Shown piece after piece: positions 2,731 through 62,876 of a stretch of DNA of 64,000 bases. The stretch is from the NCBI GenBank assembly GCA_964252035.1, contig OZ176203.1; one strand, written 5' to 3'. The stretch is from Podarcis erhardii. Taxonomy: Eukaryota. How positions within the stretch are numbered: position 1 is the first letter of the stretch; every line of letters starts with the position of its first letter. The position numbers and the translations under genes were made by a program. Under the pieces are notes generated by a model. It did not search any database, had not been told where the DNA came from, and saw only the letters and a program-made list of their open reading frames with translations.

Positions 2731-3000
2731 CAACTGGCTGTTATAATTAAACAACATGAGGAATCACAGTTCTCATAAAGGTGTCTCAGAGGGTGGCCTC
2801 CGAATGAGATTGTTATAATGGTTGCTGTTTTATTTAATTTATTTGTCGGTGGTTTATATGAGAAAAAGTCTCAAAGCAACTTTCTAAAAACTTTTAGAAT
2901 CCGTAGTTTTAATGGTGTTAGCAATGTCCCAGTAAGCCAGGGGAGTGAGAGTTAATCATAAAAGGAAAAGGAGACAAAATCATTATTAGCCTAAGCTTCC

Positions 3001-3237
3001 CCATGACGGGGTGAGCTCCCGTTGCTCGGTCCCTGCTCCTGCCAACCTAGCAGTTCAAAAGCACGTCAAAGTGCAAGTAGATAAATAGGTACCACTCCAG
3101 CGGGAAGGTAAACGGCGTTTCCGTGCACTGCTCTGGTTCGCCAGAAGCGGCTTAGTCATGCCGGCCACATGACCCGGAAGCTGTCTGCGGACAAACACCG
3201 GCTCCCTAATGGTCAGGGGTCCCTTTACCTTTACCTT
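3001..3237 (+). mobile_element. Sauria SINE, 5'-truncated with internal deletion
   Basis: Matches the copies at 23507-24228 and 28803; (ACCTTT)n tail. Confidence 0.9.
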
Positions 3238-10206: not shown

Positions 10207-10218
10207 ATGCGTCCCAAG
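10207..10218 (+). CDS. CD200: CD200 coding exon 1 (MRPK)
   Basis: agcATGcgtcccaag|gtaaga: 12 coding nt and a strong donor, phase 0. Same 12-nt first coding exon as I recall for human CD200. Confidence 0.75.
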
Positions 10219-15864: not shown

Positions 15865-16472
15865 GCATTGCATGATAAGCTCCTCTACCAAATTTCTACT
15901 CTATGCAAGGAGAAGAAGTTTAATAAAAAACAACAACAACACAGCCCTGTTTCCTCTTTATCTGTTGATGGGGCATTCTCAGATTTTACAGTCGTCATTT
16001 CATAAACAGAAAACACTTCTGCTAGGAAATCCCATGAAACCAATGAGGATCACATGTAATCATTTTGAATGTTTGTACATCACGGCACAGAAATATACAT
16101 GCACTGGGAAACTAAAGCCTGTCATAGCTTCCCAGGTTGTACATGCTGCAAAACACCAATGAGGTCAAGTCTCATTAGTGACAGTCCATAGGTGAAAACA
16201 AAATAAAAAAATTCCTTCCAGTAGCACCTTAAAGACCAACTAAGTTAGTTCTAGGTATGAGCTTTCGTGTGCATGCACACTTCTTCAGATACACTGAAAC
16301 AGAAGTCACCAGACCCTTCTAAATAGTGGGAAGGTGGGGAGGGGTATTACTCAGAAGGGTGGTGGGAATGGGTGATTGGCAGATAGCTGTGATGAGCCTG
16401 TTGACGACTCTTAACGACTGCAATAGGTCTTACAGGAAAAAGCAAGGGGTGAGAAGGTGAAAAATGGCTTTG

Positions 16473-16791
16473 TCATGTATAATGAGATAAGAATCCAATG
16501 TCTTTGTTAAGACCAGGTCTCTCCATGGTTTTAAGTTTGGTAATAAGTTGCAATTCAGCAGCTTCTCTTTCCAGTCTATTTCTGAAATTCCTTTGTAATA
16601 GAACAGCTACTTTGAGATCTTGTATAGAATGTCCTGGGAGATTGAAATGTTCTCCTACTGGTTTCTCTGTCTTGTGATTCCTGATGTCAGATTTATGTCC
16701 GTTTATCCTTTGGCGTAAGGTTTGGGCTGTTTGTCCAATATAGAGAGCTGAAGGACACTGTTGGCATTTGATGGCATACACAATGTTAGAC
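16473..16791 (-). pseudogene. Penelope GIY-YIG endonuclease C-terminal portion
   Basis: SNIVYAIKCQQCPSALYIGQT...RINGHKSDI...HFNLPGH...ERE...GLN*, no internal stops. Confidence 0.92.
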
Positions 16792-16869
16792 CAGTGTTTC
16801 CCAACCGGTGTTCCGCAGCACACTAGTGTGCCGCGACACGTTGCCTCGTGTGCCGCTTGGGAAACACTG

Positions 16870-17105
16870 CTCTAAGCGAGAGGGGACTCTGCTCAGGCTG
16901 CATCCGCCGTGCGCGAGGGAGGCGCTTCCTCTCGTGAGGGAGGCGAGAAGAAGGGAGGCGGGGCCGAGCAGGCGGATTGGCCCGGCGGCGGCCGTGACGT
17001 CACCCTGCGCGCGGCGGCAGATTCGAAACTCCTCAGGCGCAGGCGCGGCTGGAGCAGGAAGGCCGCTCTGCTTGAGAGGAAAGAGAGGGAGCCGCCGCCG
17101 CCCGG
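16870..17105 (+). promoter_or_regulatory. Captured CpG-rich cell-cycle-type promoter/5'UTR (CENPW-derived)
   Basis: GC box 16953-16965, ATTGG 16976-16980, TGACGTCA 16995-17002, GGCGG-caga-TTCGAA (CDE/CHR spacing) 17013-17027, NRF1-like 17037-17047; no ATG before 17106. Confidence 0.75.
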
Positions 17106-17168
17106 ATGAAGAACACCGTTCCGCGGAGCACCGTGAAGAAGCTGCTGAGCAAGCACAAGCCGCACTTG
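17106..17168 (+). pseudogene. CENPW: Captured N-terminal fragment of centromere protein W
   Basis: MKNTVPRSTVKKLLSKHKPHL aligns to recalled chicken CENP-W MRRTVPRGTLRKIIKKHKPHL; similarity stops abruptly after HL. Confidence 0.85.
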
Positions 17169-18068
17169 CCTCAGGGTCTTACTGCCCACCCGCCTCTGTT
17201 TCCTTGCTGTGCTTGCTCAAACGGAACAAAGAGCAGGGAAAGCCCCTCCCCTCCAGGCAAGCAGGCAGGAGGGAGAGAGAGAGAGAGAGAGAGAGAGCGT
17301 GCGAGCTGGCTGGCTTGGGTGAGTAGGTGAGGGAAAACTTTTGCCTTCCTTTCCTCCCTCCCCGTTATACCCCTCTCCTGCATTCTTAGCCAGCTGCTTC
17401 TCTGCACACCCCTCTCGTGCTCCTTGTCCGTTCTGTGTTTTTCCTTCCCTCCCCACTTAAAATGTGGTTTAAAAGCATGGATCCACATGGATCCTCAGGA
17501 TCTTTGCATTGGGTCACCCCAAATTCACCATCAGATCACATAGCATGTCCATGGCTACAGCCTGCCCCCCCAAAATCACACACCCACTGTTGCCTGGGGC
17601 TGCAATGGTGCAAAAACGTGGTTACAAAACATGGATCCACAGGGATTCTCAGGATTTTTGCATTGGGTCACCCCAAATTCACCATCAGATCACATGTCTG
17701 TGGCCACAGCATGAAGCACAAAAATGATACATCATTAATATTCACTGCCCACGGCGGCAGCCAATCGGCTGCCGCAAAGGGCGGGCCCTCACAGGTTCAC
17801 TGAATAAAGTATTTTATAATTTTTCATATTTCTGTTTACTTACTATTTCATAATAAAGTAATTATAAAATACTTTATTTGTGTTTATTTGATTCCTATTA
17901 AAGAGAGTTACTTTATATATAGTCAATATAGGCACAGAGTTAATTTTTTAAACATTTTCTAATGGTGGTGTGCCTCGAGATTTTTTTCATGAAACAAGTG
18001 TGCCTTTGCCCAAAAAAGGTTGGGAAACACTGTGTTAGACGATGAGCAATTAAATAGTCCCGAGATGG

Positions 18069-19905
18069 ACTTCCGGGTTGACGCGATCGGATTAATGGCG
18101 GATTCCCTCCGAGCTCCGGGGGGAATCGGCTCCGCTGAGAACGGGTCTTGCCGCGCCGGCGACGCGGGGACCCTTAGAAACCACAGGTGCGGATACCTGT
18201 GGACCTGGTGACTCGGTGGGCACCTTAAGCGCCCTCCTCGACAGTCAAAGAGCCTTTTTAAAGGCTGCGGAGAAGGTACGAGGAGTGGCGTGGTGCTGAG
18301 AGTAGACCGCTACCTCAGTGGAGTGAAGCCGCAAGCCATTGCCGGAGAGCGTCAACTTTCTTCCCGAAATTTGGACCGAAAGTAAACACCCCGTGAGTAA
18401 AGGAAATTCGATCTTTAAAAGAAATTTTATCCCTAATCTGGCGACCGGGGGGGACGTGCTAAAGGGAAGTCCGCACCCCCCCTCATACAGACAATTTAAA
18501 GCAAGGAGCGAAAGCCTAAGATCAGAGAGGAATAATCTCGTGTCTTTCGGAGATTGACAGAGACTTTATCAATTTACGTGAACAAGTCGTTTTTTTTTTC
18601 TAAGCTGTGCTGGAGGAAAGAGGAGAGTTTCAGAAAATTTCTGTGTACCCCCCCCCCCGAACCCGGGAGTACCCTGTAACAGCCTAGCGCGAAAGAACAG
18701 AGTTTTGACAGCTGTCAAGTGAGCTGTCAAACGGCAGGACTAAGAGAACTGTATTACTTTATATCTTTTGGATTTACAAAGTGTTTTATTCAACTAGAAG
18801 TGGTTGGAAACAAAGTAAATAACGAGCTAAAAAGACTGTTGGTACAGAACTTTAACAATGGCAATCCCTCTAGAGGGGACTGGAGACATTACAATGGCTG
18901 CAGAAGGAAAACTACTAGCAGAAATAGAAAGAGCCTTCTTTCTCGTGGGAACTTTACAAGAGCAAGCTATGATTATGGATAAACAGTTGATGACCTTGAT
19001 CTCTAAGACAAGTAATCCTGCTGATGGAAGGAAGGAATTGACTCTGGAAGATTCTGCAGCTGAACCAGAAAAGATATCTTTGGAGTTGGAGGAAAAACAG
19101 GTCGAAGGGGAGAAAGTACAGTTGTTAAACTTCTTACAGGACTCTTTGCAGCCAAGGAACAGAGAAGCCCTTTGGACTACAAGTCATGGAGAGAGAGAAG
19201 CAAGGGAGGAAGCCGCTGGACACAATAAAAGATGGGAAATTAAAAAAACAAAGAAATACAACTGGGGCTTCCTCCTCTTTTCTGGAATTGATGACTTGGG
19301 ACTTTGGGGACCTTTGGCAGAACCTTGGCACCAAGTCCTTCTAATTAGGATTGATCTGAGAAAGGATGAAGAGACCTCCCGAGACTTGAAGACCAATAAA
19401 ATGGATTACCAACAGAACAGGCAGGGAGAGACTGAAATAGACTTAAAGGCCTCTGACGTGAGAAATCCGGGCTAGGGATTTTAGAAGAGGACAGTTATTT
19501 TGGAAGGGACAGATACCTGGGCAGGGAGGGAAGGGGAAAAAGTAGAATTTAAAATTTTAGGATTTTTGGGTCTTTTTTTTATAATGTTGACTCATATTTT
19601 AATAAAAAAAGGGTAATTTTTGGTATAAGAATTTTGATTGATCTTAGAATAAGGATCTAATGTATATAAGTAAAAGATTATTGAATTGGGCCTAACAAAA
19701 AGAATCAAATTTAAACATAATAAGAATAGGATTGGGGAAGGAAATAAGAACTTGCTGAATTTAATATGGAAATTGGGATGTATGGGGGGGGGCGGGGGAA
19801 GTCAGGGAAAGAGGGTTATGAAAGCAAAGATATGAAACCATTTATATGTTTGTGTGTGTGTTGTCATAAAATGTGAAAATCCAATAATTTAAAAAAAAAA
19901 AAAAA
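18069..19905 (+). mobile_element. 1837-bp L1-related non-autonomous element (half-L1-like)
   Basis: 18-bp TSD taaatagtcccgagatgg (18051-18068, 19906-19923); (gg)acttccgg CpG-rich 5' end as in squamate L1s; one ORF; polyA at 19891-19905; no RT/EN. Confidence 0.8.
18858..19475 (+). CDS. 205-codon open ORF of the half-L1-like element (second ATG at 18894); putative ORF1 derivative
   Basis: Uninterrupted ORF, Glu/Lys-rich and helical-looking N-terminal half; I recognise no domain. Confidence 0.5.
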   Translation: MAIPLEGTGDITMAAEGKLLAEIERAFFLVGTLQEQAMIMDKQLMTLISKTSNPADGRKELTLEDSAAEPEKISLELEEKQVEGEKVQLLNFLQDSLQPRNREALWTTSHGEREAREEAAGHNKRWEIKKTKKYNWGFLLFSGIDDLGLWGPLAEPWHQVLLIRIDLRKDEETSRDLKTNKMDYQQNRQGETEIDLKASDVRNPG

Positions 19906-20748
19906 TAAATAGTCCCGAGATGGTATGTGTGATGTTGTTGGGGCCAGTAATGGTGTTGTCCGGGTGTATGTGGCAGCAAAGTTGGCATCTGGGTTTATTG
20001 CAGGCTCTGGTGCCAGTGTCCGTGTTAAGTCTGGTAGTAGTATTATTGTGGGTTAGGAGTTGTTTAAGATTGGGTGGCTGTCTGTAGGCAATGAAAGGTC
20101 TTCCTCCCAGAGCTTGAGAAAGAGAACTGTCATTGTCCAGGAGAGGTTGTAGATCTCTGATGATGCGTTGTACTGTTTTAACTTGGGAGCTGTATGTGAT
20201 GACTAGAGGTGTTCTGTTATTTTCTTTTTTGGGTCTGTCTTGCAGCAAGTTCTCTCTGGGTATCAGTCTGGCTCTGTTGATCTGTTGTCTAACTTCATCT
20301 GCTGGGTATTTTAGTTCTAAAAAGGTTTGCTGTAGATCTCTTAGGTGAGAGTCTCTGTCTGTAGAATTGGAACAGATGCGGCTGTAACGTAGTGCCTGGC
20401 TATATACAATGGACTGTTTGGTATGTTTGGGATGGTAGCTAGAGGCATGTAGATATGTTTGTCGGTCAGTTGGTTTACAGTATAAGGTGGTGTCTATGCG
20501 CCTATCCTGTATTTTTATAGTAGTGTCCAAAAAATGTATTTCTTGCATAGATTGATTCATTGTTAGGTTGATTGTGGGGTGAAAATCATTGAATTTCTGG
20601 TGGAAGGTGTCCAGGGTCTGTTGACCATGTGTCCAGATGATAAAAATATCGTCAATGTATCGCAGGTACAAGAGAGGTTTGAGTGGGTAGGAGTTTAGGA
20701 AACGTTGTTCTAAATCTGCCATGAAGATGTTGGCATACTGTGGGGCCA
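19906..20748 (-). pseudogene. Penelope reverse transcriptase C-terminal portion and linker
   Basis: APQYANIFM...YLRYIDDIFIIW...FLD...LYCKPTD...SSYHP...RICS; no stops; joins in frame to the GIY-YIG part once inserts are removed. Confidence 0.93.
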
Positions 20749-21128
20749 ACAGGAATTTTTTTATTTTGTTTTGACTATGGCAGACCAACACGGCTACCTA
20801 TCTATAACTAGTCCATAGGTGGATTTCAACTTCCCCACTATTTAAAGAAATGGGTAAAGTACGGTATGTACAATGTGAAGTAGCCTTCAGGCCAATGACC
20901 TGCCATTTGTTAGTTCTTAGCTAGACATGGAAAAGCTTCACTGCTTGTCTTGGGGAGTTTTGTCTGCTATGGCAACATTTTGAAAATCCCCTGATATGGT
21001 TGCAGTGGAACAACAGCCTCTTTCTTCATTATGCACCTGGGCTATACCCAAAATCCAAATAGTAGAGCATTGCGGTGGCAAAAAAGGCTATTGTGTATCT
21101 GTAACACATCTCTTTTTTCTATTCCTAG

Positions 21129-21210
21129 TTAAATGAAGGTCTCTGTTCCCCATGGACGTTCCAGGGCCTGACTCTGTGCATCATATGTATTGTTCTCTGT
21201 AGGATAAAGG
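21129..21210 (+). CDS. CD200: CD200 exon 2 (signal peptide)
   Basis: tcttttttctattcctag| 82 nt |gtaagt, phase 0 to 1; LNEGLCSPWTFQGLTLCIICIVLCRIKG. Confidence 0.88.
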
Positions 21211-22175
21211 GTAAGTCTAACATGATTAGTGCATTGGGGAAAGTGTAATGACTAGGCAAGGGTGGCTCAAGACATTTTGCCACCTGAGGCAATGGACAAC
21301 ATGGTACACACACACACTCTTGATATTGAGTAGCCAGCTGGACTGACTGCTGAATCCTAATTCAGTACTAGCAATGGGGCACTGCACTGTCCTGGAGGGA
21401 GGTCAGCACCATACTTGTAAGGCTGGAGCCCCACAGCTCTCAGCTCCAACAGTATGGACAGGGATATCAGGAGGAAGAGCTAAGGGCTGCCACCACCTCC
21501 CATCTTATGGCACCTGCAGCAGTCACCTCATTCTACCTAATGGTAGAGCCAGACCTTTGGCTATGAGCCAGTAGACCAGCAAGTGTGGCTGGCAGAGGGC
21601 TATGGAGAGTCTTGTGTTGCTGTGAGCAGGATGGGCTTCTATTTTGAGTCAAAGAAATGTATTTTTTTGGCATCTGTCTGTCTCAGGAGACAATGGAGGA
21701 GCACGCTTTGAGGGATGAAGTCAAACTGTTGGAAGGTTGCAGCGCCTGCTGTGGAGAGATATGTTTTGTTGCAGGTCAGGCAGATGAAGGCATCTGGTTG
21801 TGCTGCTACAAATGAACCATAGTGTTTCTTTTCTCTGTGCTCCTCCCAGTGGCCTTTCATCTTCTGGTCACTGCACAGACACACACAGAGCTGCCTTGTG
21901 AGGTTAAATAAGGTATGCAGCAACCCTCTTCCCCAAATTGTTCCTACCATGAATTTCAGAAAGGCTTCCTTTTCCCTCCACCTATCCAGTGAAAGGTATT
22001 AAAAAATGAAAGAAAAATATTTTGGAATTAGCAGCCCAGTTCTAATCTGTTCATGGTTGCTAGAAGTGCAGAACAGGAATTTTTGCATAAATAAATATTT
22101 TCCTTGGATCTAGACCAAGGGATTTGTAAGCATAAGATACGAGAGGTGATTATTAATTATTTTGTCTTGCCGCAG

Positions 22176-22502
22176 GTGCCATATTGACAAGTGACAGAGA
22201 CGTGGAGCTGGGCGGCAACGCTACTTTGAGATGTACCCTAACAGAATCTCTTCAAACTGTTCAAGTTACATGGCAGCAAGAGGTTAATAAAAACGCTGTA
22301 AATTTGGCAGCATATGGCAACAAACAAATTCCAAATATTAACGACCGATACAAAGGTCGAGTCAATTTAACAATTTTTGAACTCAATGACACTGCCATCA
22401 GCTTCTGGAATGTTAGCACCGAAGAAAATGGTTGTTACCGATGCATATTTAACATATTTCCTCCAGGATCCAATAGCAAAAAAACTTGTCTTTCTGTTTA
22501 CG
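22176..22502 (+). CDS. CD200: CD200 exon 3 (IgV domain)
   Basis: 327 nt, phase 1-1; ATLRC...VTWQ...FWNVS...GCYRCIFNIF...TCLSVY, including the extra F/G-strand Cys pair characteristic of CD200. Confidence 0.95.
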
Positions 22503-23506
22503 GTGAGTCATTTCATATTAAAATAGCTAGAGCAGGGCATTTCTTCAAATATGCTCCTTTGATAATGAAGCAATACAACACACACCATTATCTCACCCCC
22601 GTTCCAGGGGCGCAAGACTTGCCCAAGTTTGCTTTCCTTAGGAAGGGTGTTACAAGAGCCCTACAGCATTTCCTAATACTTGGTTTCATCCAACAATATA
22701 ACTACCGATTGAGTATAATTGGAACTACAGCTTAAACCACAGGTGGTGAACCTGTGGTCCTTCAGTTGATGTTGGACTATAACTCCTACGATCCATGAGC
22801 ACGCTAGCTGCAGATTATGAGAGCAAAACCTGATGGTCTAAGGTTACAATATCCACAGCAGATCGGAGGCAGTATATTTCCAGTTGCCCAGGTCCTGCCT
22901 GTGGACTTCCTGTGGGCATCTGATTGGCTACTGTGAGAGCAGAATGCTGAACTTGATAGGTCATTGATCCATTAGGTTCTTATATTCTTCTATGCTGATA
23001 TGGGGAGTGGAACAGGACACTAAGAAGCTCCGGGGACCAAAAGCTCAGCTTGGTGTCTGATCTCCATCTGCCTCAAAACTGCAGGCTTCTCCTTTTGTTT
23101 CCCTGTATATACAGAGACCTGGATCACAACATTTGTTAACTGTGCAGGAGGATCTGTCCCCTTCTCTCATAATTCTTCCGATTCAGAACATTCCCAAATC
23201 TTTTGTTAGCAATGGACTAAGCAATTTGTTGCTATGGCAACATATTCCTGAACAATTAACAAGTCCAAGGTTCTGGCCTGTTATGCCACAGAGAAACTCA
23301 CACTAACGGAAACCCCTTTGTAAAACTGAATAGAAATCAGCCCACTGTGTAATAATGTTACAACATATGTTTTAGTTTTCAGCCAGAATATTGCAGTGTG
23401 GGACATTGGGCTTTTCCACATGTACGGTGTGTTGAATAACACACTATAGCACACTACAGTTGAAGGATGATTGCTCAAAGTTAACATAAGTTTCCTACCA
23501 TATAGT

Positions 23507-23864
23507 AGGAAAGTAGTAGTAAAGGGACCCCTGACCATTAGGTCCAGTCATGGCCGACTCTGGGGTTGCGGTGCTCATCTCTCTTTATTGGCTAAGGGAG
23601 CTGGCGTACAACTTCCGGGTCATGTGGCCAGCATGACTAAGCCACTTCTGGGAAACCAGAGCAGTGCACGGAAATGCCATTTACCTTCCTGCCGGAGTGG
23701 TACCTATTTATCTACTTGCACTTTGACGTGCTTTCAAACTGCTAGGTTGGCAGGAGCAGGGACTGAGCAACGGGAGTTCACCCCATTGCAGGGATTCGAA
23801 CCGCCAACCTTCTGATCGGCAAGTCCTAGGCTCTGTGGTTTAACCCACAGCACCACCCGTGTCC
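23507..23864 (-). mobile_element. Sauria SINE, full length
   Basis: Complete head and body; flanked by ttcctaccatatagt-like target copies. Confidence 0.92.
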
Positions 23865-23880
23865 TTTTTCCTACTATATA

Positions 23881-24228
23881 AGGTAAAGGTAAAGGGACCC
23901 CTGACCATTAGGTCCAGTCATGACCGACTCTGGGGTTGCGGCGCTCATCTCGCTTTATTGGCCGAGGGAGCCGGCATACAGCTTCCGGGTCATGTGGCCA
24001 GCATGACTAAGCCGCTTCTGGCGAACCAGAGCAGCACACGGAAACGCCGTTTACCTTCCCGCTGGAGCGGTACCTATTTATCTACTTGCACTTCGTGCTT
24101 TCGAACTGCTAGGTTGGCAGGAGCAGGGACCGAGCAACGGGAGCTCACCCCATCGCGGGGATTCGAACCACCGACCTTCTGATTGGCAAGTCCTAGGCTC
24201 TATGGTTTAACCCACAGCGCCACCCGCG
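23881..24228 (-). mobile_element. Sauria SINE, full length (tandem to previous)
   Basis: Complete element with (ACCTTT) tail. Confidence 0.92.
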
Positions 24229-24377
24229 TTCCTACCATATAGTCTGCCTCTAATTCAACAGTTTGCAGTTTGCCCTGCTGAGTCCCTCACTGATACAGTA
24301 GCATCTTTTCATCTTCCTTTTATTGCCCACCTGCGGTCCTTATGGTGAAGCATTTTGTGCCGTCATTTATGTCACAG

Positions 24378-24641
24378 GCCGCCTCAACACATTTTTACAC
24401 TACAGCATCTCTGATGGGCGCTTGAATGCCACCTGCTCAGCAACGGGCTTCCCACGTCCCAACATCACATGGGTTGCGCCAAGAGGCCTGAAGGAGGAAC
24501 ACGAGATCACAAATCCCAATGGAACAGTATCGGTCATAAGCAATATCCTTGTAAATGCCTCAGATAGCCATTCTGGACAAGAGATGATCTGCAAGGTTAC
24601 ACACAGGGGGAAAGAGATGGATCTCAAGGTACCAAGAAAAG
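24378..24641 (+). CDS. CD200: CD200 exon 4 (IgC2 domain)
   Basis: 264 nt, phase 1-1; LHY...NATCSATGFPRPNITW...NPNGTVSVIS...ICKVTHRG; donor g|gtaagt. Confidence 0.95.
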
Positions 24642-24734
24642 GTAAGTGAGCAAAGCACTCGGTGCCTGTCATCCTCCTAAAAGGTAGCAAAACTTTCATC
24701 TCAAAAATCTTGTATTTTCTTTTCTTCCATTCTA

Positions 24735-24874: not shown

Positions 24875-25455
24875 ATGTAAAAGGAAAAAAAAACAAAATT
24901 CAGACTAAAGAGAGGCTTTAGTGCAGGGATGTGGAACAGGTTCCAGGTGGCCAATTTTGGCAGTTGAGTGGGGCTACCCACCTGTCCACCCCTGGATCCT
25001 TTAATACTGTATATTTCACACTTCCTCTTATCAAGTAATAATTATCATTTTAGTCTATTGTTACATGCACGCATTCTTCCTTATTTTTTCCCTCCTTCAA
25101 GATGGATTTGGGCATGTGCTTTTAGTCTCCCTCTGAAATTCTTTACTCTTACCTCTTTCATAAACAGAAACACACTCACTGGTTTTCAGCGAATGCATTT
25201 TGAACATATTCTTAGGAGTTATTTCAACCTCTAGTCATCTCACCCACTACAGCAAATTAAGGACCTCACTTTCAATGTAGAATTGTGAATTTATTCTGTT
25301 ATATTACATTATTATATCATATTATATTATAATATAAATTATTATATTATATTATATTATATTATATTATAATTATATTATATTATTGCATTTATATTTA
25401 TATTACACAGACTCCTCTCCATATTGTCAGCAATTATTTTCTTTCCTCCATATAG

Positions 25456-25550
25456 GCTATCCATATGCTGTGGTCGTAACTGTACTTGTCCTAATTTCTC
25501 TGACTGTGGTTATTATTGCGGTGTGCTGCTGGAAACGACACCAAAAATAG
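25456..25550 (+). CDS. CD200: CD200 exon 5 (TM and very short tail, stop TAG)
   Basis: ctttcctccatatag|; GYPYAVVVTVLVLISLTVVIIAVCCWKRHQK*; the WKRH motif matches human CD200. Confidence 0.92.
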
Positions 25551-28802: not shown

Positions 28803-29173
28803 GGGGGACGTGGGTGGCGCTGTGGGTAAAACCTCAGTGCCTAGGACTTGCCGATCAGAAGGTCGGCGGTTCGAATCCCCGCGGTGGGGTGAGCTCCCGT
28901 CGTTCGGTCCCAGCTCCTGCCCACCTAGCAGTTCGAAAGCACCCCTAAGTGCAAGTAGATAAATAGGTACCGCTTTATAGCGGGAAGGTAAACGGCGTTT
29001 CCGTGTGGTGCGCTGGTGCTGGCTCGCCAGCTACAGCTTCGTCACGCTGGCCACGTGACCCGGAAGTGTCTTCGGATGGCACTGGCTCCCGGCCTCTTGA
29101 GCAAGATGAGCGCGCAACCCTAGAGTCGGTCACGACCGGCCCGTACGGGCAGGGGTACCTTTACCTTTACCTT
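28803..29173 (+). mobile_element. Sauria SINE (different subfamily), full length
   Basis: 13-bp TSD taagctctactga (28790-28802, 29174-29186); (ACCTTT)n tail. Confidence 0.93.
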
Positions 29174-40664: not shown

Positions 40665-40830
40665 NNNNNNNNNNNNNNNNNNNNNNNNNNNNNNNNNNNN
40701 NNNNNNNNNNNNNNNNNNNNNNNNNNNNNNNNNNNNNNNNNNNNNNNNNNNNNNNNNNNNNNNNNNNNNNNNNNNNNNNNNNNNNNNNNNNNNNNNNNNN
40801 NNNNNNNNNNNNNNNNNNNNNNNNNNNNNN
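40665..40830. other. Assembly gap (166 N)
   Basis: Seen directly. Confidence 1.
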
Positions 40831-52216: not shown

Positions 52217-52507
52217 NNNNNNNNNNNNNNNNNNNNNNNNNNNNNNNNNNNNNNNNNNNNNNNNNNNNNNNNNNNNNNNNNNNNNNNNNNNNNNNNNNNN
52301 NNNNNNNNNNNNNNNNNNNNNNNNNNNNNNNNNNNNNNNNNNNNNNNNNNNNNNNNNNNNNNNNNNNNNNNNNNNNNNNNNNNNNNNNNNNNNNNNNNNN
52401 NNNNNNNNNNNNNNNNNNNNNNNNNNNNNNNNNNNNNNNNNNNNNNNNNNNNNNNNNNNNNNNNNNNNNNNNNNNNNNNNNNNNNNNNNNNNNNNNNNNN
52501 NNNNNNN
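52217..52507. other. Assembly gap (291 N)
   Basis: Seen directly. Confidence 1.
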
Positions 52508-62378: not shown

Positions 62379-62876
62379 TCAGTGGTCTTCAGACTTGAGA
62401 AGCTGGTGTGAATACCCATCAGGCAAGTAGGTTTTTCTTAGCTGGTCTGCCTTGGGTATGGAGTTCCCATTCTTCACATGGCGAGAGAGGAAAGCTCGCA
62501 CAGCTGGGTGATCAGCCTTCTCGAGGGGAATGCTAGCTTCCAGAAACATTTTTACAAAGTCCTGGACGACACCGGGCTTCTCTGGCGGGGCTGCGCTGTT
62601 GCACTGCAAAGAGGCAGTCAGAGTTCGCGGTTTCTTCCTGACAGTTTGCTCCTCAAACTCCCCCTTGCGTTTGGTGTGCGTTTTGGATTTGAGATGGTCA
62701 TTGATGGCCGACTTGCGAACATGATTCAGGACCACATTGCAGAATGTGCAGTACAGTTTCCCCCCGTCTTCATACAGTTCGCTGCCAAATTCAGTAACGC
62801 GATCCTGAGGAGTCACATACAAAGCGGTTTTAGAACGGCTCCGGGAGGGAGGTGGCTTCACGTCAAATCGTTCCAT
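62379..62876 (-). CDS. CGGBP1: CGG triplet repeat-binding protein 1 (165 aa, single coding exon)
   Basis: MERF...RSKTALYVTP.DRVTEFG.EL.EDGGKL.CT.CNVVLNHVRKSAI.DHLKSKTH matches CGGBP1 with its C2H2/BED-type finger; acceptor ttgttttaag| at 62897 leaves 21 nt of 5'UTR. Confidence 0.98.
   Translation of the reverse strand: MERFDVKPPPSRSRSKTALYVTPQDRVTEFGSELYEDGGKLYCTFCNVVLNHVRKSAINDHLKSKTHTKRKGEFEEQTVRKKPRTLTASLQCNSAAPPEKPGVVQDFVKMFLEASIPLEKADHPAVRAFLSRHVKNGNSIPKADQLRKTYLPDGYSHQLLKSEDH

What the first reader, a model, noticed from the sequence alone, without database searches (positions are those of the whole stretch)
16953..17047. Intact G2/M promoter grammar (GC box, CCAAT, CRE, CDE-4nt-CHR) inside CD200 intron 1, sense orientation
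Seen: GGCGG (17013-17017), a 4-nt spacer, then TTCGAA (17022-17027), with upstream ATTGG, GC box and a perfect TGACGTCA; many CpGs are retained. Knowledge: CDE/CHR elements with this spacing recruit DREAM/MuvB at late cell-cycle genes, and TTCGAA is a recognised CHR variant. Inference: a possible proliferation-linked internal promoter for an immune-checkpoint ligand gene.
Basis: partly seen in the sequence, partly recalled or inferred. Interest (0 to 1): 0.7.

Follow-up and report, generated by a model that had tools for sequence, protein, structure and literature searches.

The report
Transposon-borne CENPW promoter copy in CD200
The cell-cycle promoter motifs are real, but they are a young copy of the promoter of the centromere gene CENPW, carried into the first intron of a wall-lizard CD200 gene by a cut-and-paste transposon present in about 20 copies, and nothing shows that it drives CD200.

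Summary
The CDE-4nt-CHR pair is not chance: 1 hit against 0.01 expected.

The cluster is not a native CD200 element. Window 16883-17169 is a 287-bp copy (95.9% identical) of a Podarcis CENPW promoter, 5'UTR and first 21 codons. It sits inside a 1,241-bp non-autonomous hAT transposon (16792-18032) with terminal inverted repeats and a perfect 8-bp target duplication.

The CDE/CHR block is the best-conserved part of CENPW promoters in nine sauropsid orthologues. The CRE core is partly conserved. The ATTGG (CCAAT) occurs in none of the nine.

Contig depth in a DNA run suggests about 20 near-identical hybrid copies. The scan had already noted this hybrid on two other pieces of this genome.

The Penelope element that holds the transposon is missing, with a clean empty site, from the P. 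raffonei CD200 orthologue. This insertion is therefore lineage-specific, and intact motifs and CpGs reflect youth.

The listed RNA contigs show only a parental-type CENPW transcript. No listed contig crosses the hybrid junction, and no listed joint links 17318 to CD200 exon 2. This rests on contigs and truncated lists, so absence is unproven.

Verdict: a genuine G2/M promoter module, most likely an inert passenger. A role as a CD200 promoter is unsupported.

The parts
16953..16964 (+). GC-box-like GGGAGGCGGGGC
   Evidence: Read directly. The block GGCGGGGC(C/T)GAGCAGG is shared by most squamate CENPW promoters in alignment A2.
16976..16980 (+). ATTGG (inverted CCAAT)
   Evidence: Present in the copy. 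The Podarcis parent locus L001 reads ATTAG. None of 9 orthologues has CCAAT/ATTGG within 229 nt of the ATG.
16995..17002 (+). Palindromic CRE TGACGTCA
   Evidence: Only occurrence in the window, 0.26 expected. TGACGT is shared by Podarcis, Rhineura, Varanus, Elgaria, Hemicordylus and Sceloporus. The central CG is invariant in all 10 rows of A2.
17013..17027 (+). CDE (GGCGG 17013-17017), 4-nt spacer, CHR (TTCGAA 17022-17027)
   Evidence: One hit against 0.01 expected. Seven of the 12 columns upstream of the ATG that are invariant in all ten sequences fall in this 15-nt block. A CHR stands at the equivalent place in 9 of 9 orthologues.
16883..17169 (+). 287-bp copy of CENPW promoter, 5'UTR and first 21 codons
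   Evidence: blastn and MAFFT against the Podarcis CENPW locus L001 9775-10064: 95.9% identity, 9 substitutions and one 3-nt GCC indel. The 3' break lies inside CENPW exon 1, which in the parent runs on about 30 nt to a GTGAGG donor.
17106..17168 (+). ATG and 21 codons identical to CENP-W residues 1-21
   Evidence: 100% identical to P0001, centromere protein W, 76 aa, PF15510. tblastn of P0001 on the window finds residues 1-21 only.
16792..18032 (+). Non-autonomous hAT-type transposon carrying the CENPW fragment
   Evidence: Terminal inverted repeats at 16792-16817 and 18007-18032, and an extra internal inverted copy at 16853-16875. No family-matched ORF. Read joints 16783->18033 with 8 shared letters show copies of the host Penelope element without it.
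16784..16791 (.). Left 8-bp target-site duplication TGTTAGAC
   Evidence: Read. Identical to 18033-18040.
18033..18040 (.). Right 8-bp target-site duplication TGTTAGAC
17319..17324 (+). GTGAGT donor-like site in the transposon body, in phase 0 with the captured ATG (71 codons)
   Evidence: Sequence and ORF 17106-17330. CD200 exon 2 starts in phase 0 at 21129. No joint 17318->21129 among those listed.
16195..20809 (-). 5'-truncated Penelope-like retroelement holding the nested hAT and an L1-like element
   Evidence: GIY-YIG domain at 16473-16790 (PF01541, E 1.5e-6) and an RT tail at 19889-20791 (PF00078, E 1.1e-4, 22.4 bits, below Pfam's 29.6-bit cut-off; the YIDD motif is read directly). The whole block is absent from P. 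raffonei, and a 12-nt duplication AGTCCATAGGTG stands at 16183-16194 and 20810-20821.
18051..19902 (+). L1-like non-LTR element with an A-rich tail, nested in the Penelope element
   Evidence: 21-nt direct repeat at 18048-18068 and 19903-19923, and an A run at 19886-19907. Joints 16791->19906 show Penelope copies without it.
10207..10218 (+). Coding part of CD200 exon 1 (MRPK), followed by a GTAAGA donor
21129..21213 (+). CD200 exon 2 (signal peptide)
   Evidence: 100% identical to residues 5-32 of P. raffonei OX-2 membrane glycoprotein-like. AG acceptor and GTAAGT donor.

Best explanation
The motif cluster is the core promoter of the centromere gene CENPW, duplicated as DNA. A 287-bp piece holding the promoter, 5'UTR and first 21 codons was captured inside a 1.2-kb non-autonomous hAT transposon. 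That hybrid was then amplified in trans to roughly 20 near-identical copies. One copy landed, with an 8-bp target duplication, in a Penelope-like retroelement in intron 1 of CD200, in the sense orientation.

The grammar is intact because the copy is young and because it inherits a CDE/CHR module that is deeply conserved in CENPW. In the parent gene that module presumably recruits MuvB: DREAM in G0/G1, then MMB-FOXM1 in S/G2-M.

At this locus the copy is most likely an inert, probably silenced passenger rather than a working CD200 promoter. Shown here: the homology, the transposon anatomy, the copy number by depth, the lineage-specific insertion, and conservation of the CDE/CHR. Inferred: how the capture happened, DREAM/MMB binding in lizards, and silence of this copy.
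For: Identity. The ORF at 17106 matches Podarcis CENP-W residues 1-21 at 100%. Window 16883-17169 aligns to the CENPW locus at 95.9%. Only 21 codons are present in the window.

Transposon. Inverted repeats and a perfect 8-bp TGTTAGAC duplication. Read joints show the Penelope family without the insert.

Copy number. In DNA run X1 the contigs 16808-16993, which spans the 5' capture junction, and 16995-17117 have depth about 2,050. Single-copy CD200 flanks have about 100. Each contig differs from the window by one letter.

Youth and lineage. The block 16195-20809 is absent from P. raffonei with a clean empty site. An organism-G contig also departs from the window at 20810.

Conservation. A CHR is present in 9 of 9 orthologues. 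The strict CDE+4+CHR pattern is present in 7 of 9.

Literature. TTCGAA is a validated CHR. CENPW is listed among DREAM targets.

No sign of activity. RNA run X15 has one 278-nt contig (depth 96) on 16944-17169. It then runs on for 55 nt unlike the window, as the parent does at the same breakpoint. RNA run X18 has CD200 mRNA (2,142-nt contig) but zero depth on 16897-17093. No listed joint links 17318 to 21129.
Against: All runs were Logan contigs, not raw reads. They cannot show starts, strand or rare isoforms, and the joint, loose-end and piece lists were truncated. Silence is therefore not proven.

The RNA runs come from organism labels H, which differ by about 2.5-3% in the CD200 V exon. They may lack this very insertion.

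Both CD200 mRNA contigs end at the exon-2 acceptor (about 21129), which could hide alternative first exons.

CpG o/e of 0.99 is compatible with an unmethylated state as well as with youth. A strong in-frame donor at 17319 makes use as a first exon mechanically possible.

Depth ratios from contigs are only a rough copy number.
Confidence: 0.78

Rival explanations
1. The copy is a working, proliferation-linked alternative promoter. In cycling cells MMB-FOXM1 on the CHR fires transcripts that run sense into CD200 intron 1. These use the GTGAGT donor at 17319 and splice in frame to exon 2, giving a CD200 mRNA with a 71-codon CENPW/transposon leader.
For: The full conserved CDE/CHR plus CRE and GC-box block is present, with at least 61 nt upstream of the furthest point reached by the parental RNA contig. 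The orientation is sense, and the donor is in phase 0 with a phase-0 acceptor. CpGs are undecayed. CD200 mRNA contigs break at the exon-2 acceptor in two RNA runs, as expected if more than one upstream sequence joins there.
Against: No listed RNA contig crosses 17169/17170, and no listed joint links 17318 to 21129. Run X18 expresses CD200 but has zero depth on the copy's promoter and 5'UTR. The insertion is absent from P. raffonei and organism G, so it is not a conserved feature of CD200. It sits inside nested repeats, a usual target of silencing (inference). A 71-residue extension ahead of the signal peptide would probably impair normal targeting (inference).
Confidence: 0.12
2. The copy binds MuvB/DREAM or CREB/ATF without producing stable transcripts. 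It would then act as a local repressive, enhancer-like or decoy site. With about 20 copies, the family would be a small sink for these factors.
For: CHR and CRE are intact. DREAM binds TTCGAA probes in vitro (PMC4176359). The family is multi-copy.
Against: No binding data exist for any lizard. Twenty sites are few beside the hundreds of native CHR promoters. Nothing in the sequence separates this reading from inertness.
Confidence: 0.08
3. The cluster is a chance assembly of short motifs, or a native regulatory element of CD200.
For: ATTGG and GC-rich strings are common in CpG-rich DNA.
Against: The stretch is 95.9% identical over 287 bp to the CENPW promoter and exon 1. It lies within TIRs and a target duplication. 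The CDE-N4-CHR pattern is expected 0.01 times per window. The stretch is absent from the P. raffonei CD200 orthologue.
Confidence: 0.01

Closest known systems
Native CENPW promoter (Podarcis locus L001; orthologues in squamates, quail, turtle)
   Same: The same sequence over 287 bp. The GC-box block, the CRE, the CDE-4nt-CHR (TTCGAA) and the ATG context are the same, and the first 21 codons are identical.
   Different: It is cut off 226 nt upstream of the ATG and inside exon 1. It is flanked by transposon DNA. It carries ATTGG where L001 has ATTAG, and it has no downstream CENPW exons.
CDE/CHR and CHR-only late cell-cycle promoters of mammals (e.g. CCNB2 CDE/CHR; BUB1 with a TTCGAA CHR), PMC4176359
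   Same: A validated CHR hexamer, a G/C-rich CDE exactly 4 nt upstream, a CpG-island context, and a position near the transcript start within the +/-200 nt window used there.
   Different: No binding or cell-cycle expression data exist for this copy or for lizard CENPW. The conserved CENPW module has no CCAAT boxes, which are usually found upstream of CHRs.
Animal Pack-TIR elements, especially multicopy Pack-hAT-N8_XT carrying 291 bp of the CAPSL 5'UTR in Xenopus tropicalis (Tan et al. 2021, PMC8277862)
   Same: A non-autonomous hAT with a roughly 290-bp fragment from the 5' end of a host gene, an identifiable parent, separate target duplications, and more than one copy.
   Different: That survey found only 4 multicopy cases among 370, and the frog example has three copies. 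Here depth suggests about 20. The cargo includes a conserved, recognisable promoter module, not only UTR.
Helitron-borne NUBPL promoter and exon copies in vespertilionid bats
   Same: A DNA transposon that captured a host promoter with its first exon and spread it through a vertebrate genome.
   Different: A different superfamily (rolling-circle against cut-and-paste), far higher copy numbers in bats, and a different cargo. This is a recollection, not a test.

Membership tests
CDE/CHR late cell-cycle (DREAM / MMB-FOXM1) promoter | CHR hexamer of an experimentally validated type | tested here: met
   TTCGAA at 17022-17027. It is validated in Bub1 and is one of the three commonest CHRs (PMC4176359).
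CDE/CHR late cell-cycle (DREAM / MMB-FOXM1) promoter | G/C-rich CDE exactly 4 nt upstream of the CHR (optional; 23% of CHR promoters have one) | tested here: met
   GGCGG at 17013-17017 with the spacer CAGA. The 23% figure is.
CDE/CHR late cell-cycle (DREAM / MMB-FOXM1) promoter | Phylogenetic conservation of the CHR in the gene's promoter | tested here: met
   For the parent gene, a CHR stands at the aligned place in 9 of 9 sauropsid CENPW promoters (Sceloporus as inverse TTCAAA). Seven of 12 invariant upstream columns lie in the CDE/CHR.
CDE/CHR late cell-cycle (DREAM / MMB-FOXM1) promoter | [quoted passage not shown] | tested here: inconclusive
   A parental-type RNA contig reaches 16944, 78 nt upstream of the CHR. 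That is within the +/-200 nt window of PMC4176359, but contigs cannot place a start.
CDE/CHR late cell-cycle (DREAM / MMB-FOXM1) promoter | CCAAT boxes (NF-Y) upstream of the CHR (usual companion, not strictly defining) | tested here: inconclusive
   There is one ATTGG in the copy. The parent L001 has ATTAG, and 0 of 9 orthologues have CCAAT/ATTGG within 229 nt of the ATG.
CDE/CHR late cell-cycle (DREAM / MMB-FOXM1) promoter | DREAM/MuvB binding and expression peaking in G2/M | not testable with these tools
   Only by analogy: mammalian CENPW is listed among p53-DREAM targets.
Pack-TIR (Pack-hAT) transduplicating transposon | Terminal inverted repeats and an 8-bp target-site duplication | tested here: met
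   TIRs at 16792-16817 and 18007-18032. TGTTAGAC stands on both sides.
Pack-TIR (Pack-hAT) transduplicating transposon | Internal host-gene fragment with an identifiable parent locus | tested here: met
   Window 16883-17169 against L001 9775-10064, 95.9% identity.
Pack-TIR (Pack-hAT) transduplicating transposon | No transposase of its own | tested here: met
   The element is 1,241 bp. Its ORFs have no Pfam hit.
Pack-TIR (Pack-hAT) transduplicating transposon | Mobilised as a unit (more than one copy with the same capture junction) | tested here: met
   The contig across the 5' junction has depth about 2,050 against about 100 for unique flanks. Earlier notes place the same hybrid on two other pieces of the genome (not verified by me at sequence level).
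Alternative internal promoter of CD200 | Transcripts that start in the element and continue into CD200 exons | tested here: inconclusive
   No listed contig bridges 17169/17170, and no listed joint links 17318 to 21129. The lists were truncated, only contigs were available, and the RNA runs come from another organism label.
Alternative internal promoter of CD200 | Presence at the orthologous site in related species | tested here: not met
   Absent from P. raffonei CD200 intron 1, with a clean empty site. An organism-G contig also lacks it.

The most novel reading that the evidence does not exclude
A hAT transposon has spread about 20 near-identical copies of a DREAM/MMB-FOXM1-type cell-cycle promoter, each with a start codon and a downstream splice donor, through a wall-lizard genome. 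Some copies lie in sense inside host introns, among them the one in the immune-checkpoint ligand gene CD200. These would fire in proliferating cells and give their host genes new G2/M-linked first exons. That would be a natural, replicated experiment in promoter shuffling by a vertebrate DNA transposon.
Probability: 0.1. Interest if true: 0.65.

Novelty: new member of a known kind. Interest (0 to 1): 0.33.

Why it matters
As a claim about CD200 it matters little. The element is a recent, lineage-specific passenger with no sign of use.

As an object it is a tidy case of a vertebrate cut-and-paste transposon that captured a recognisable, deeply conserved cell-cycle promoter and multiplied it. 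In the one survey read here, only 4 of 370 animal Pack-TIRs were multicopy.

If some copies are active, about 20 identical CDE/CHR promoters in different chromatin and gene contexts would allow two tests. One is how position and silencing override a DREAM-type promoter. The other is whether such captures create new first exons.

The comparison also shows that the CENPW CDE/CHR module is conserved across sauropsids without a conserved CCAAT box.

Tried and rejected
Chance motif cluster: rejected.

Genuine CENPW gene in this window: rejected, because tblastn finds only residues 1-21.

Retrocopy or L1 5' transduction of CENPW mRNA: rejected. The 3' break lies inside exon 1, not at a splice site, and the piece is bounded by hAT repeats with an 8-bp duplication.

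Pfam on the 74-aa chimeric ORF, on the 205-aa ORF at 18858-19475 and on the 128-aa ORF at 17417-17803: no hits.

A closer outgroup for polarising the nine differences: Zootoca CENP-W and P. lilfordi CD200 are not on record in the contig look-up.

Supplementary tables of PMC4176359, to see whether CENPW is among its listed CHR genes: not held.

Search for the transposon body in the ten fetched loci and elsewhere in the window: nothing beyond a GA microsatellite and the internal 154-nt repeat.

CpG decay as a proxy for methylation: uninformative. The copy keeps 32 of the parent's 36 CpGs and differs from the 20-copy family contigs by one letter each.

Using the 5' end of the RNA contig as a TSS: rejected as proof, because contigs cannot show starts.

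Papers linking Podarcis with CENPW, or transposon capture with CHR elements: none found.

Two paper searches failed on term syntax.

Full report
**Observation.** The sequence holds the following motifs:
- GGGAGGCGGGGC at 16953-16964
- ATTGG at 16976-16980
- TGACGTCA at 16995-17002
- GGCGG at 17013-17017, then the 4-nt spacer CAGA
- TTCGAA at 17022-17027

The stretch 16801-17200 is a CpG island, with GC 0.66-0.72 and CpG o/e about 0.9-1.1. The composite pattern SGCGG-N4-TTYGAA occurs once in the window on both strands, against 0.01 expected from shuffles. TGACGTCA occurs once against 0.26 expected. ATTGG alone is too short to mean anything.

**Where it lies.** Proteins named OX-2 membrane glycoprotein(-like), which is CD200, from Podarcis raffonei and Zootoca vivipara map onto the + strand of the window. 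The exons are:

| Exon | Window coordinates | Note |
|---|---|---|
| Exon 1, coding part | 10207-10218 | four codons, then a GTAAGA donor |
| Exon 2 | 21129-21213 | behind an AG, 100% identical to P. raffonei |
| V-set exon | about 22178-22505 | |
| C2 exon | about 24377-24643 | |
| TM exon | 25455-25547 | |

**What it is.** An ATG at 17106 opens a 74-codon ORF. Its first 21 residues are 100% identical to a 76-aa centromere protein W labelled Podarcis muralis (PF15510). I fetched the genomic locus of that protein as L001, from a Podarcis assembly. Whether it is the same species as the window is not known. Window 16883-17169 aligns to L001 9775-10064 at 95.9%, with nine substitutions and one GCC indel. 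That covers 226 nt upstream of the ATG and the first 21 codons.

Homology stops at 17169/17170, inside CENPW exon 1. The parent runs on about 30 nt to a GTGAGG donor. tblastn finds no other CENP-W residues in the window. This is a DNA-level copy of the 5' end of CENPW. It is neither the gene itself nor a retrocopy.

**How it got there.** Three nested insertions explain the context.
- **The hAT transposon.** The copy lies between inverted repeats at 16792-16817 and 18007-18032, with a further internal inverted copy at 16853-16875. The octamer TGTTAGAC flanks the element at 16784-16791 and 18033-18040. An 8-bp duplication with such repeats is the signature of a hAT element (established knowledge). 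The 1,241-bp element has no transposase.
- **The Penelope-like host.** The hAT interrupts a minus-strand Penelope-like retroelement. Its GIY-YIG domain is at 16473-16790 (Pfam E 1.5e-6). Its RT tail is at 19889-20791 (PF00078 E 1.1e-4, below Pfam's gathering cut-off, with the YIDD motif read directly).
- **The L1-like element.** The Penelope element also carries an L1-like element at 18051-19902, with a 21-nt duplication and an A tail.

**Copy number.** In the best DNA holder (X1) the single-copy CD200 flanks have contig depth of about 100. This run matches the window at 99.8% in those flanks. The contigs on 16808-16993, which crosses the 5' capture junction, and on 16995-17117 have depth of about 2,050. 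Each differs from the window by one letter. That suggests roughly 20 near-identical copies of the hybrid. It is a rough figure, since it comes from contigs.

The rest of the transposon body is far more abundant, at 800 to 20,000 times single-copy depth. The hybrid is therefore a small, young subfamily of a large family. Earlier notes of this scan place the same hybrid in a DOCK intron (about 25 copies by depth) and in an SLC23A2 intron of the same genome. I did not see those sequences. My depth estimate is independent of them.

**Age of this insertion.** The P. raffonei CD200 locus (L010) is collinear with the window at 96-98% identity, except that the whole block 16195-20809 is missing. That block is the Penelope element with both nested elements. 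P. raffonei has a clean empty site, and the window has the 12-mer AGTCCATAGGTG on both sides. A contig of DNA run X13 (organism G, about 2% diverged) also departs from the window exactly at 20810. The CENPW promoter copy in CD200 is therefore lineage-specific and recent.

**Is the grammar functional in its source?** I aligned the copy and the Podarcis parent with the 5' regions of CENPW from Rhineura, Varanus, Elgaria, Hemicordylus, Pogona, Sceloporus, Coturnix and Emydura. Twelve columns upstream of the ATG are invariant in all ten rows. Seven of them lie in the 15-nt CDE-spacer-CHR block, and two are the central CG of the CRE.
- **CHR:** TTCGAA or TTTGAA stands 62-112 nt upstream of the ATG in eight orthologues. 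Sceloporus has the inverse TTCAAA.
- **CDE:** the strict CDE+4+CHR pattern holds in seven of nine.
- **GC-box block and TGACGT:** shared by most squamates.
- **CCAAT:** no orthologue has CCAAT or ATTGG within 229 nt of the ATG, and L001 itself reads ATTAG. The 'CCAAT box' is not part of the conserved module.

A CDE lies 4 nt upstream of a CHR. TTCGAA is a validated CHR (Bub1) and one of the three commonest. CHRs sit at or near the TSS. Only 23% of CHR promoters have a CDE (PMC4176359). Mammalian CENPW is listed among p53-DREAM targets (PMC5729532, PMC6753476). The cluster is therefore a genuine late-cell-cycle promoter module by descent.

**Is this copy active?** Only Logan contigs were available. 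No listed holder was on record as RNA, and six small runs were guessed to be RNA. Spliced CD200 contigs in X15 and X18 show that these two are real RNA.
- **X15:** one 278-nt contig (depth 96) lies on 16944-17169 and then continues for 55 nt unlike the window. It departs at the same point where the parent gene and a 610-nt DNA contig of X13 depart. I read it as parental CENPW mRNA. It shows that parental transcripts can include the whole motif block, though contigs cannot place a start.
- **No hybrid transcript:** nothing in X15 covers 16897-16943, and no listed RNA contig crosses 17169/17170.
- **X18:** this run has a 2,142-nt CD200 mRNA contig but zero depth on 16897-17093.
- **No splice to exon 2:** no joint 17318->21129 is among the listed joints.

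Several caveats apply. The joint, loose-end and piece lists were truncated. Contigs drop rare forms. The RNA runs belong to an organism label whose CD200 V exon differs by about 2.5-3%, so it may lack this insertion. Both CD200 mRNA contigs end at the exon-2 acceptor, so what is joined upstream is unseen. Silence is therefore the more likely reading but is not shown.

**CpGs.** The copy keeps 32 of the parent's 36 CpGs, at o/e 0.99. Two losses are CG>CA. At 17035 the parental-type RNA contig of X15 also has A. At least part of the difference from L001 is therefore variation in the parent lineage, not decay of the copy. The window copy differs from the 20-copy family contigs by about one letter per contig. 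It is too young for CpG retention to say anything about methylation.

**Mechanism, committed.** Most likely (about 0.78) this is an inert passenger.
1. A host promoter fragment was captured into a hAT element, for instance by repair or template switching. This step is inferred (compare PMC8277862).
2. The hybrid was amplified in trans by an autonomous hAT.
3. One copy dropped by chance into a retroelement in CD200 intron 1.

If it were unmethylated, established knowledge predicts two phases. In quiescent cells LIN54/MuvB would bind the CHR with E2F4/DP on the CDE, giving DREAM repression. In S/G2-M, MMB-FOXM1 would activate it. Transcripts would then run sense into the intron. The GTGAGT at 17319 is in phase with the captured ATG (71 codons) and with the phase-0 acceptor of exon 2.

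I computed phases only. Such a product would carry 71 extra residues ahead of the CD200 signal peptide.

**Comparison and novelty.** The closest known things are three:
- the native CENPW promoter;
- mammalian CDE/CHR promoters;
- animal Pack-TIRs.

Tan et al. 2021 found 370 Pack-TIRs in 100 animal genomes. Of these, 208 were hAT-borne and only four were multicopy. One was a hAT with 291 bp of the CAPSL 5'UTR in three copies. This case is a new member of that kind, with a higher apparent copy number and a recognisable conserved promoter as cargo. No paper in the library links Podarcis with CENPW. The scan had already noted the hybrid in this window and on two other pieces of this genome.

**Housekeeping.** No contig taken for human was fetched or used. 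The N runs at 40665-40830 and 52217-52507 were left untouched.

Noticed in passing
window 16183-16194 and 20810-20821; L010 9581-9592: The whole 4.6-kb block (a Penelope-like element with nested L1-like and hAT elements) is an insertion with a 12-nt duplication AGTCCATAGGTG. It is absent from P. raffonei. Three nested insertions therefore accumulated in one lineage after that split.
   Followed up: yes
L001 9871-9875 against window 16976-16980: The Podarcis CENPW parent locus reads ATTAG where the transposon copy reads ATTGG. The parental-type contigs of runs X13 and X15 showed no listed difference there, so the A may be private to the L001 lineage. The lists were truncated, so this is not certain.
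   Followed up: partly
window 17960-18032 (loose ends in RNA runs X15 and X18): RNA contigs join the right end of the hAT element (from 17960) to a GC-rich sequence with a CRE-like TGACGTCA that is not in the window. It weakly resembles the CENPW CRE region in reverse. It may be another subfamily with different or inverted cargo.
   Followed up: no
window 17459-17541 and 17613-17695: A 154-nt tandem duplication inside the transposon body belongs to an extremely abundant repeat, with contig depth about 20,000 times single-copy in two species.
   Followed up: no
window 21129 (table 3 row 21158): CD200 mRNA contigs of two RNA runs end within about 3 nt of the exon-2 acceptor. This is what a branch in the assembly graph would give if more than one upstream sequence (exon 1, unspliced intron, or another first exon) joins there.
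   Followed up: no
window 62379-62876 (-): An intact 165-aa ORF looks, from memory, like CGGBP1, a domesticated hAT-derived DNA-binding protein. It would be a neighbouring gene. It was not searched.
   Followed up: no
window 2998-3193, 23519-24242, 28803-29172; L001 8925-9290 and 22332-22703: A CpG-rich SINE-like repeat of about 360 nt occurs several times in the window, twice in tandem between the CD200 V and C2 exons, and also flanks the CENPW parent locus.
   Followed up: no
window 18001-18400: A second CpG-rich stretch (o/e 0.85-1.16) forms the 5' end of the L1-like element next to the hAT. It may be that element's own internal promoter.
   Followed up: no
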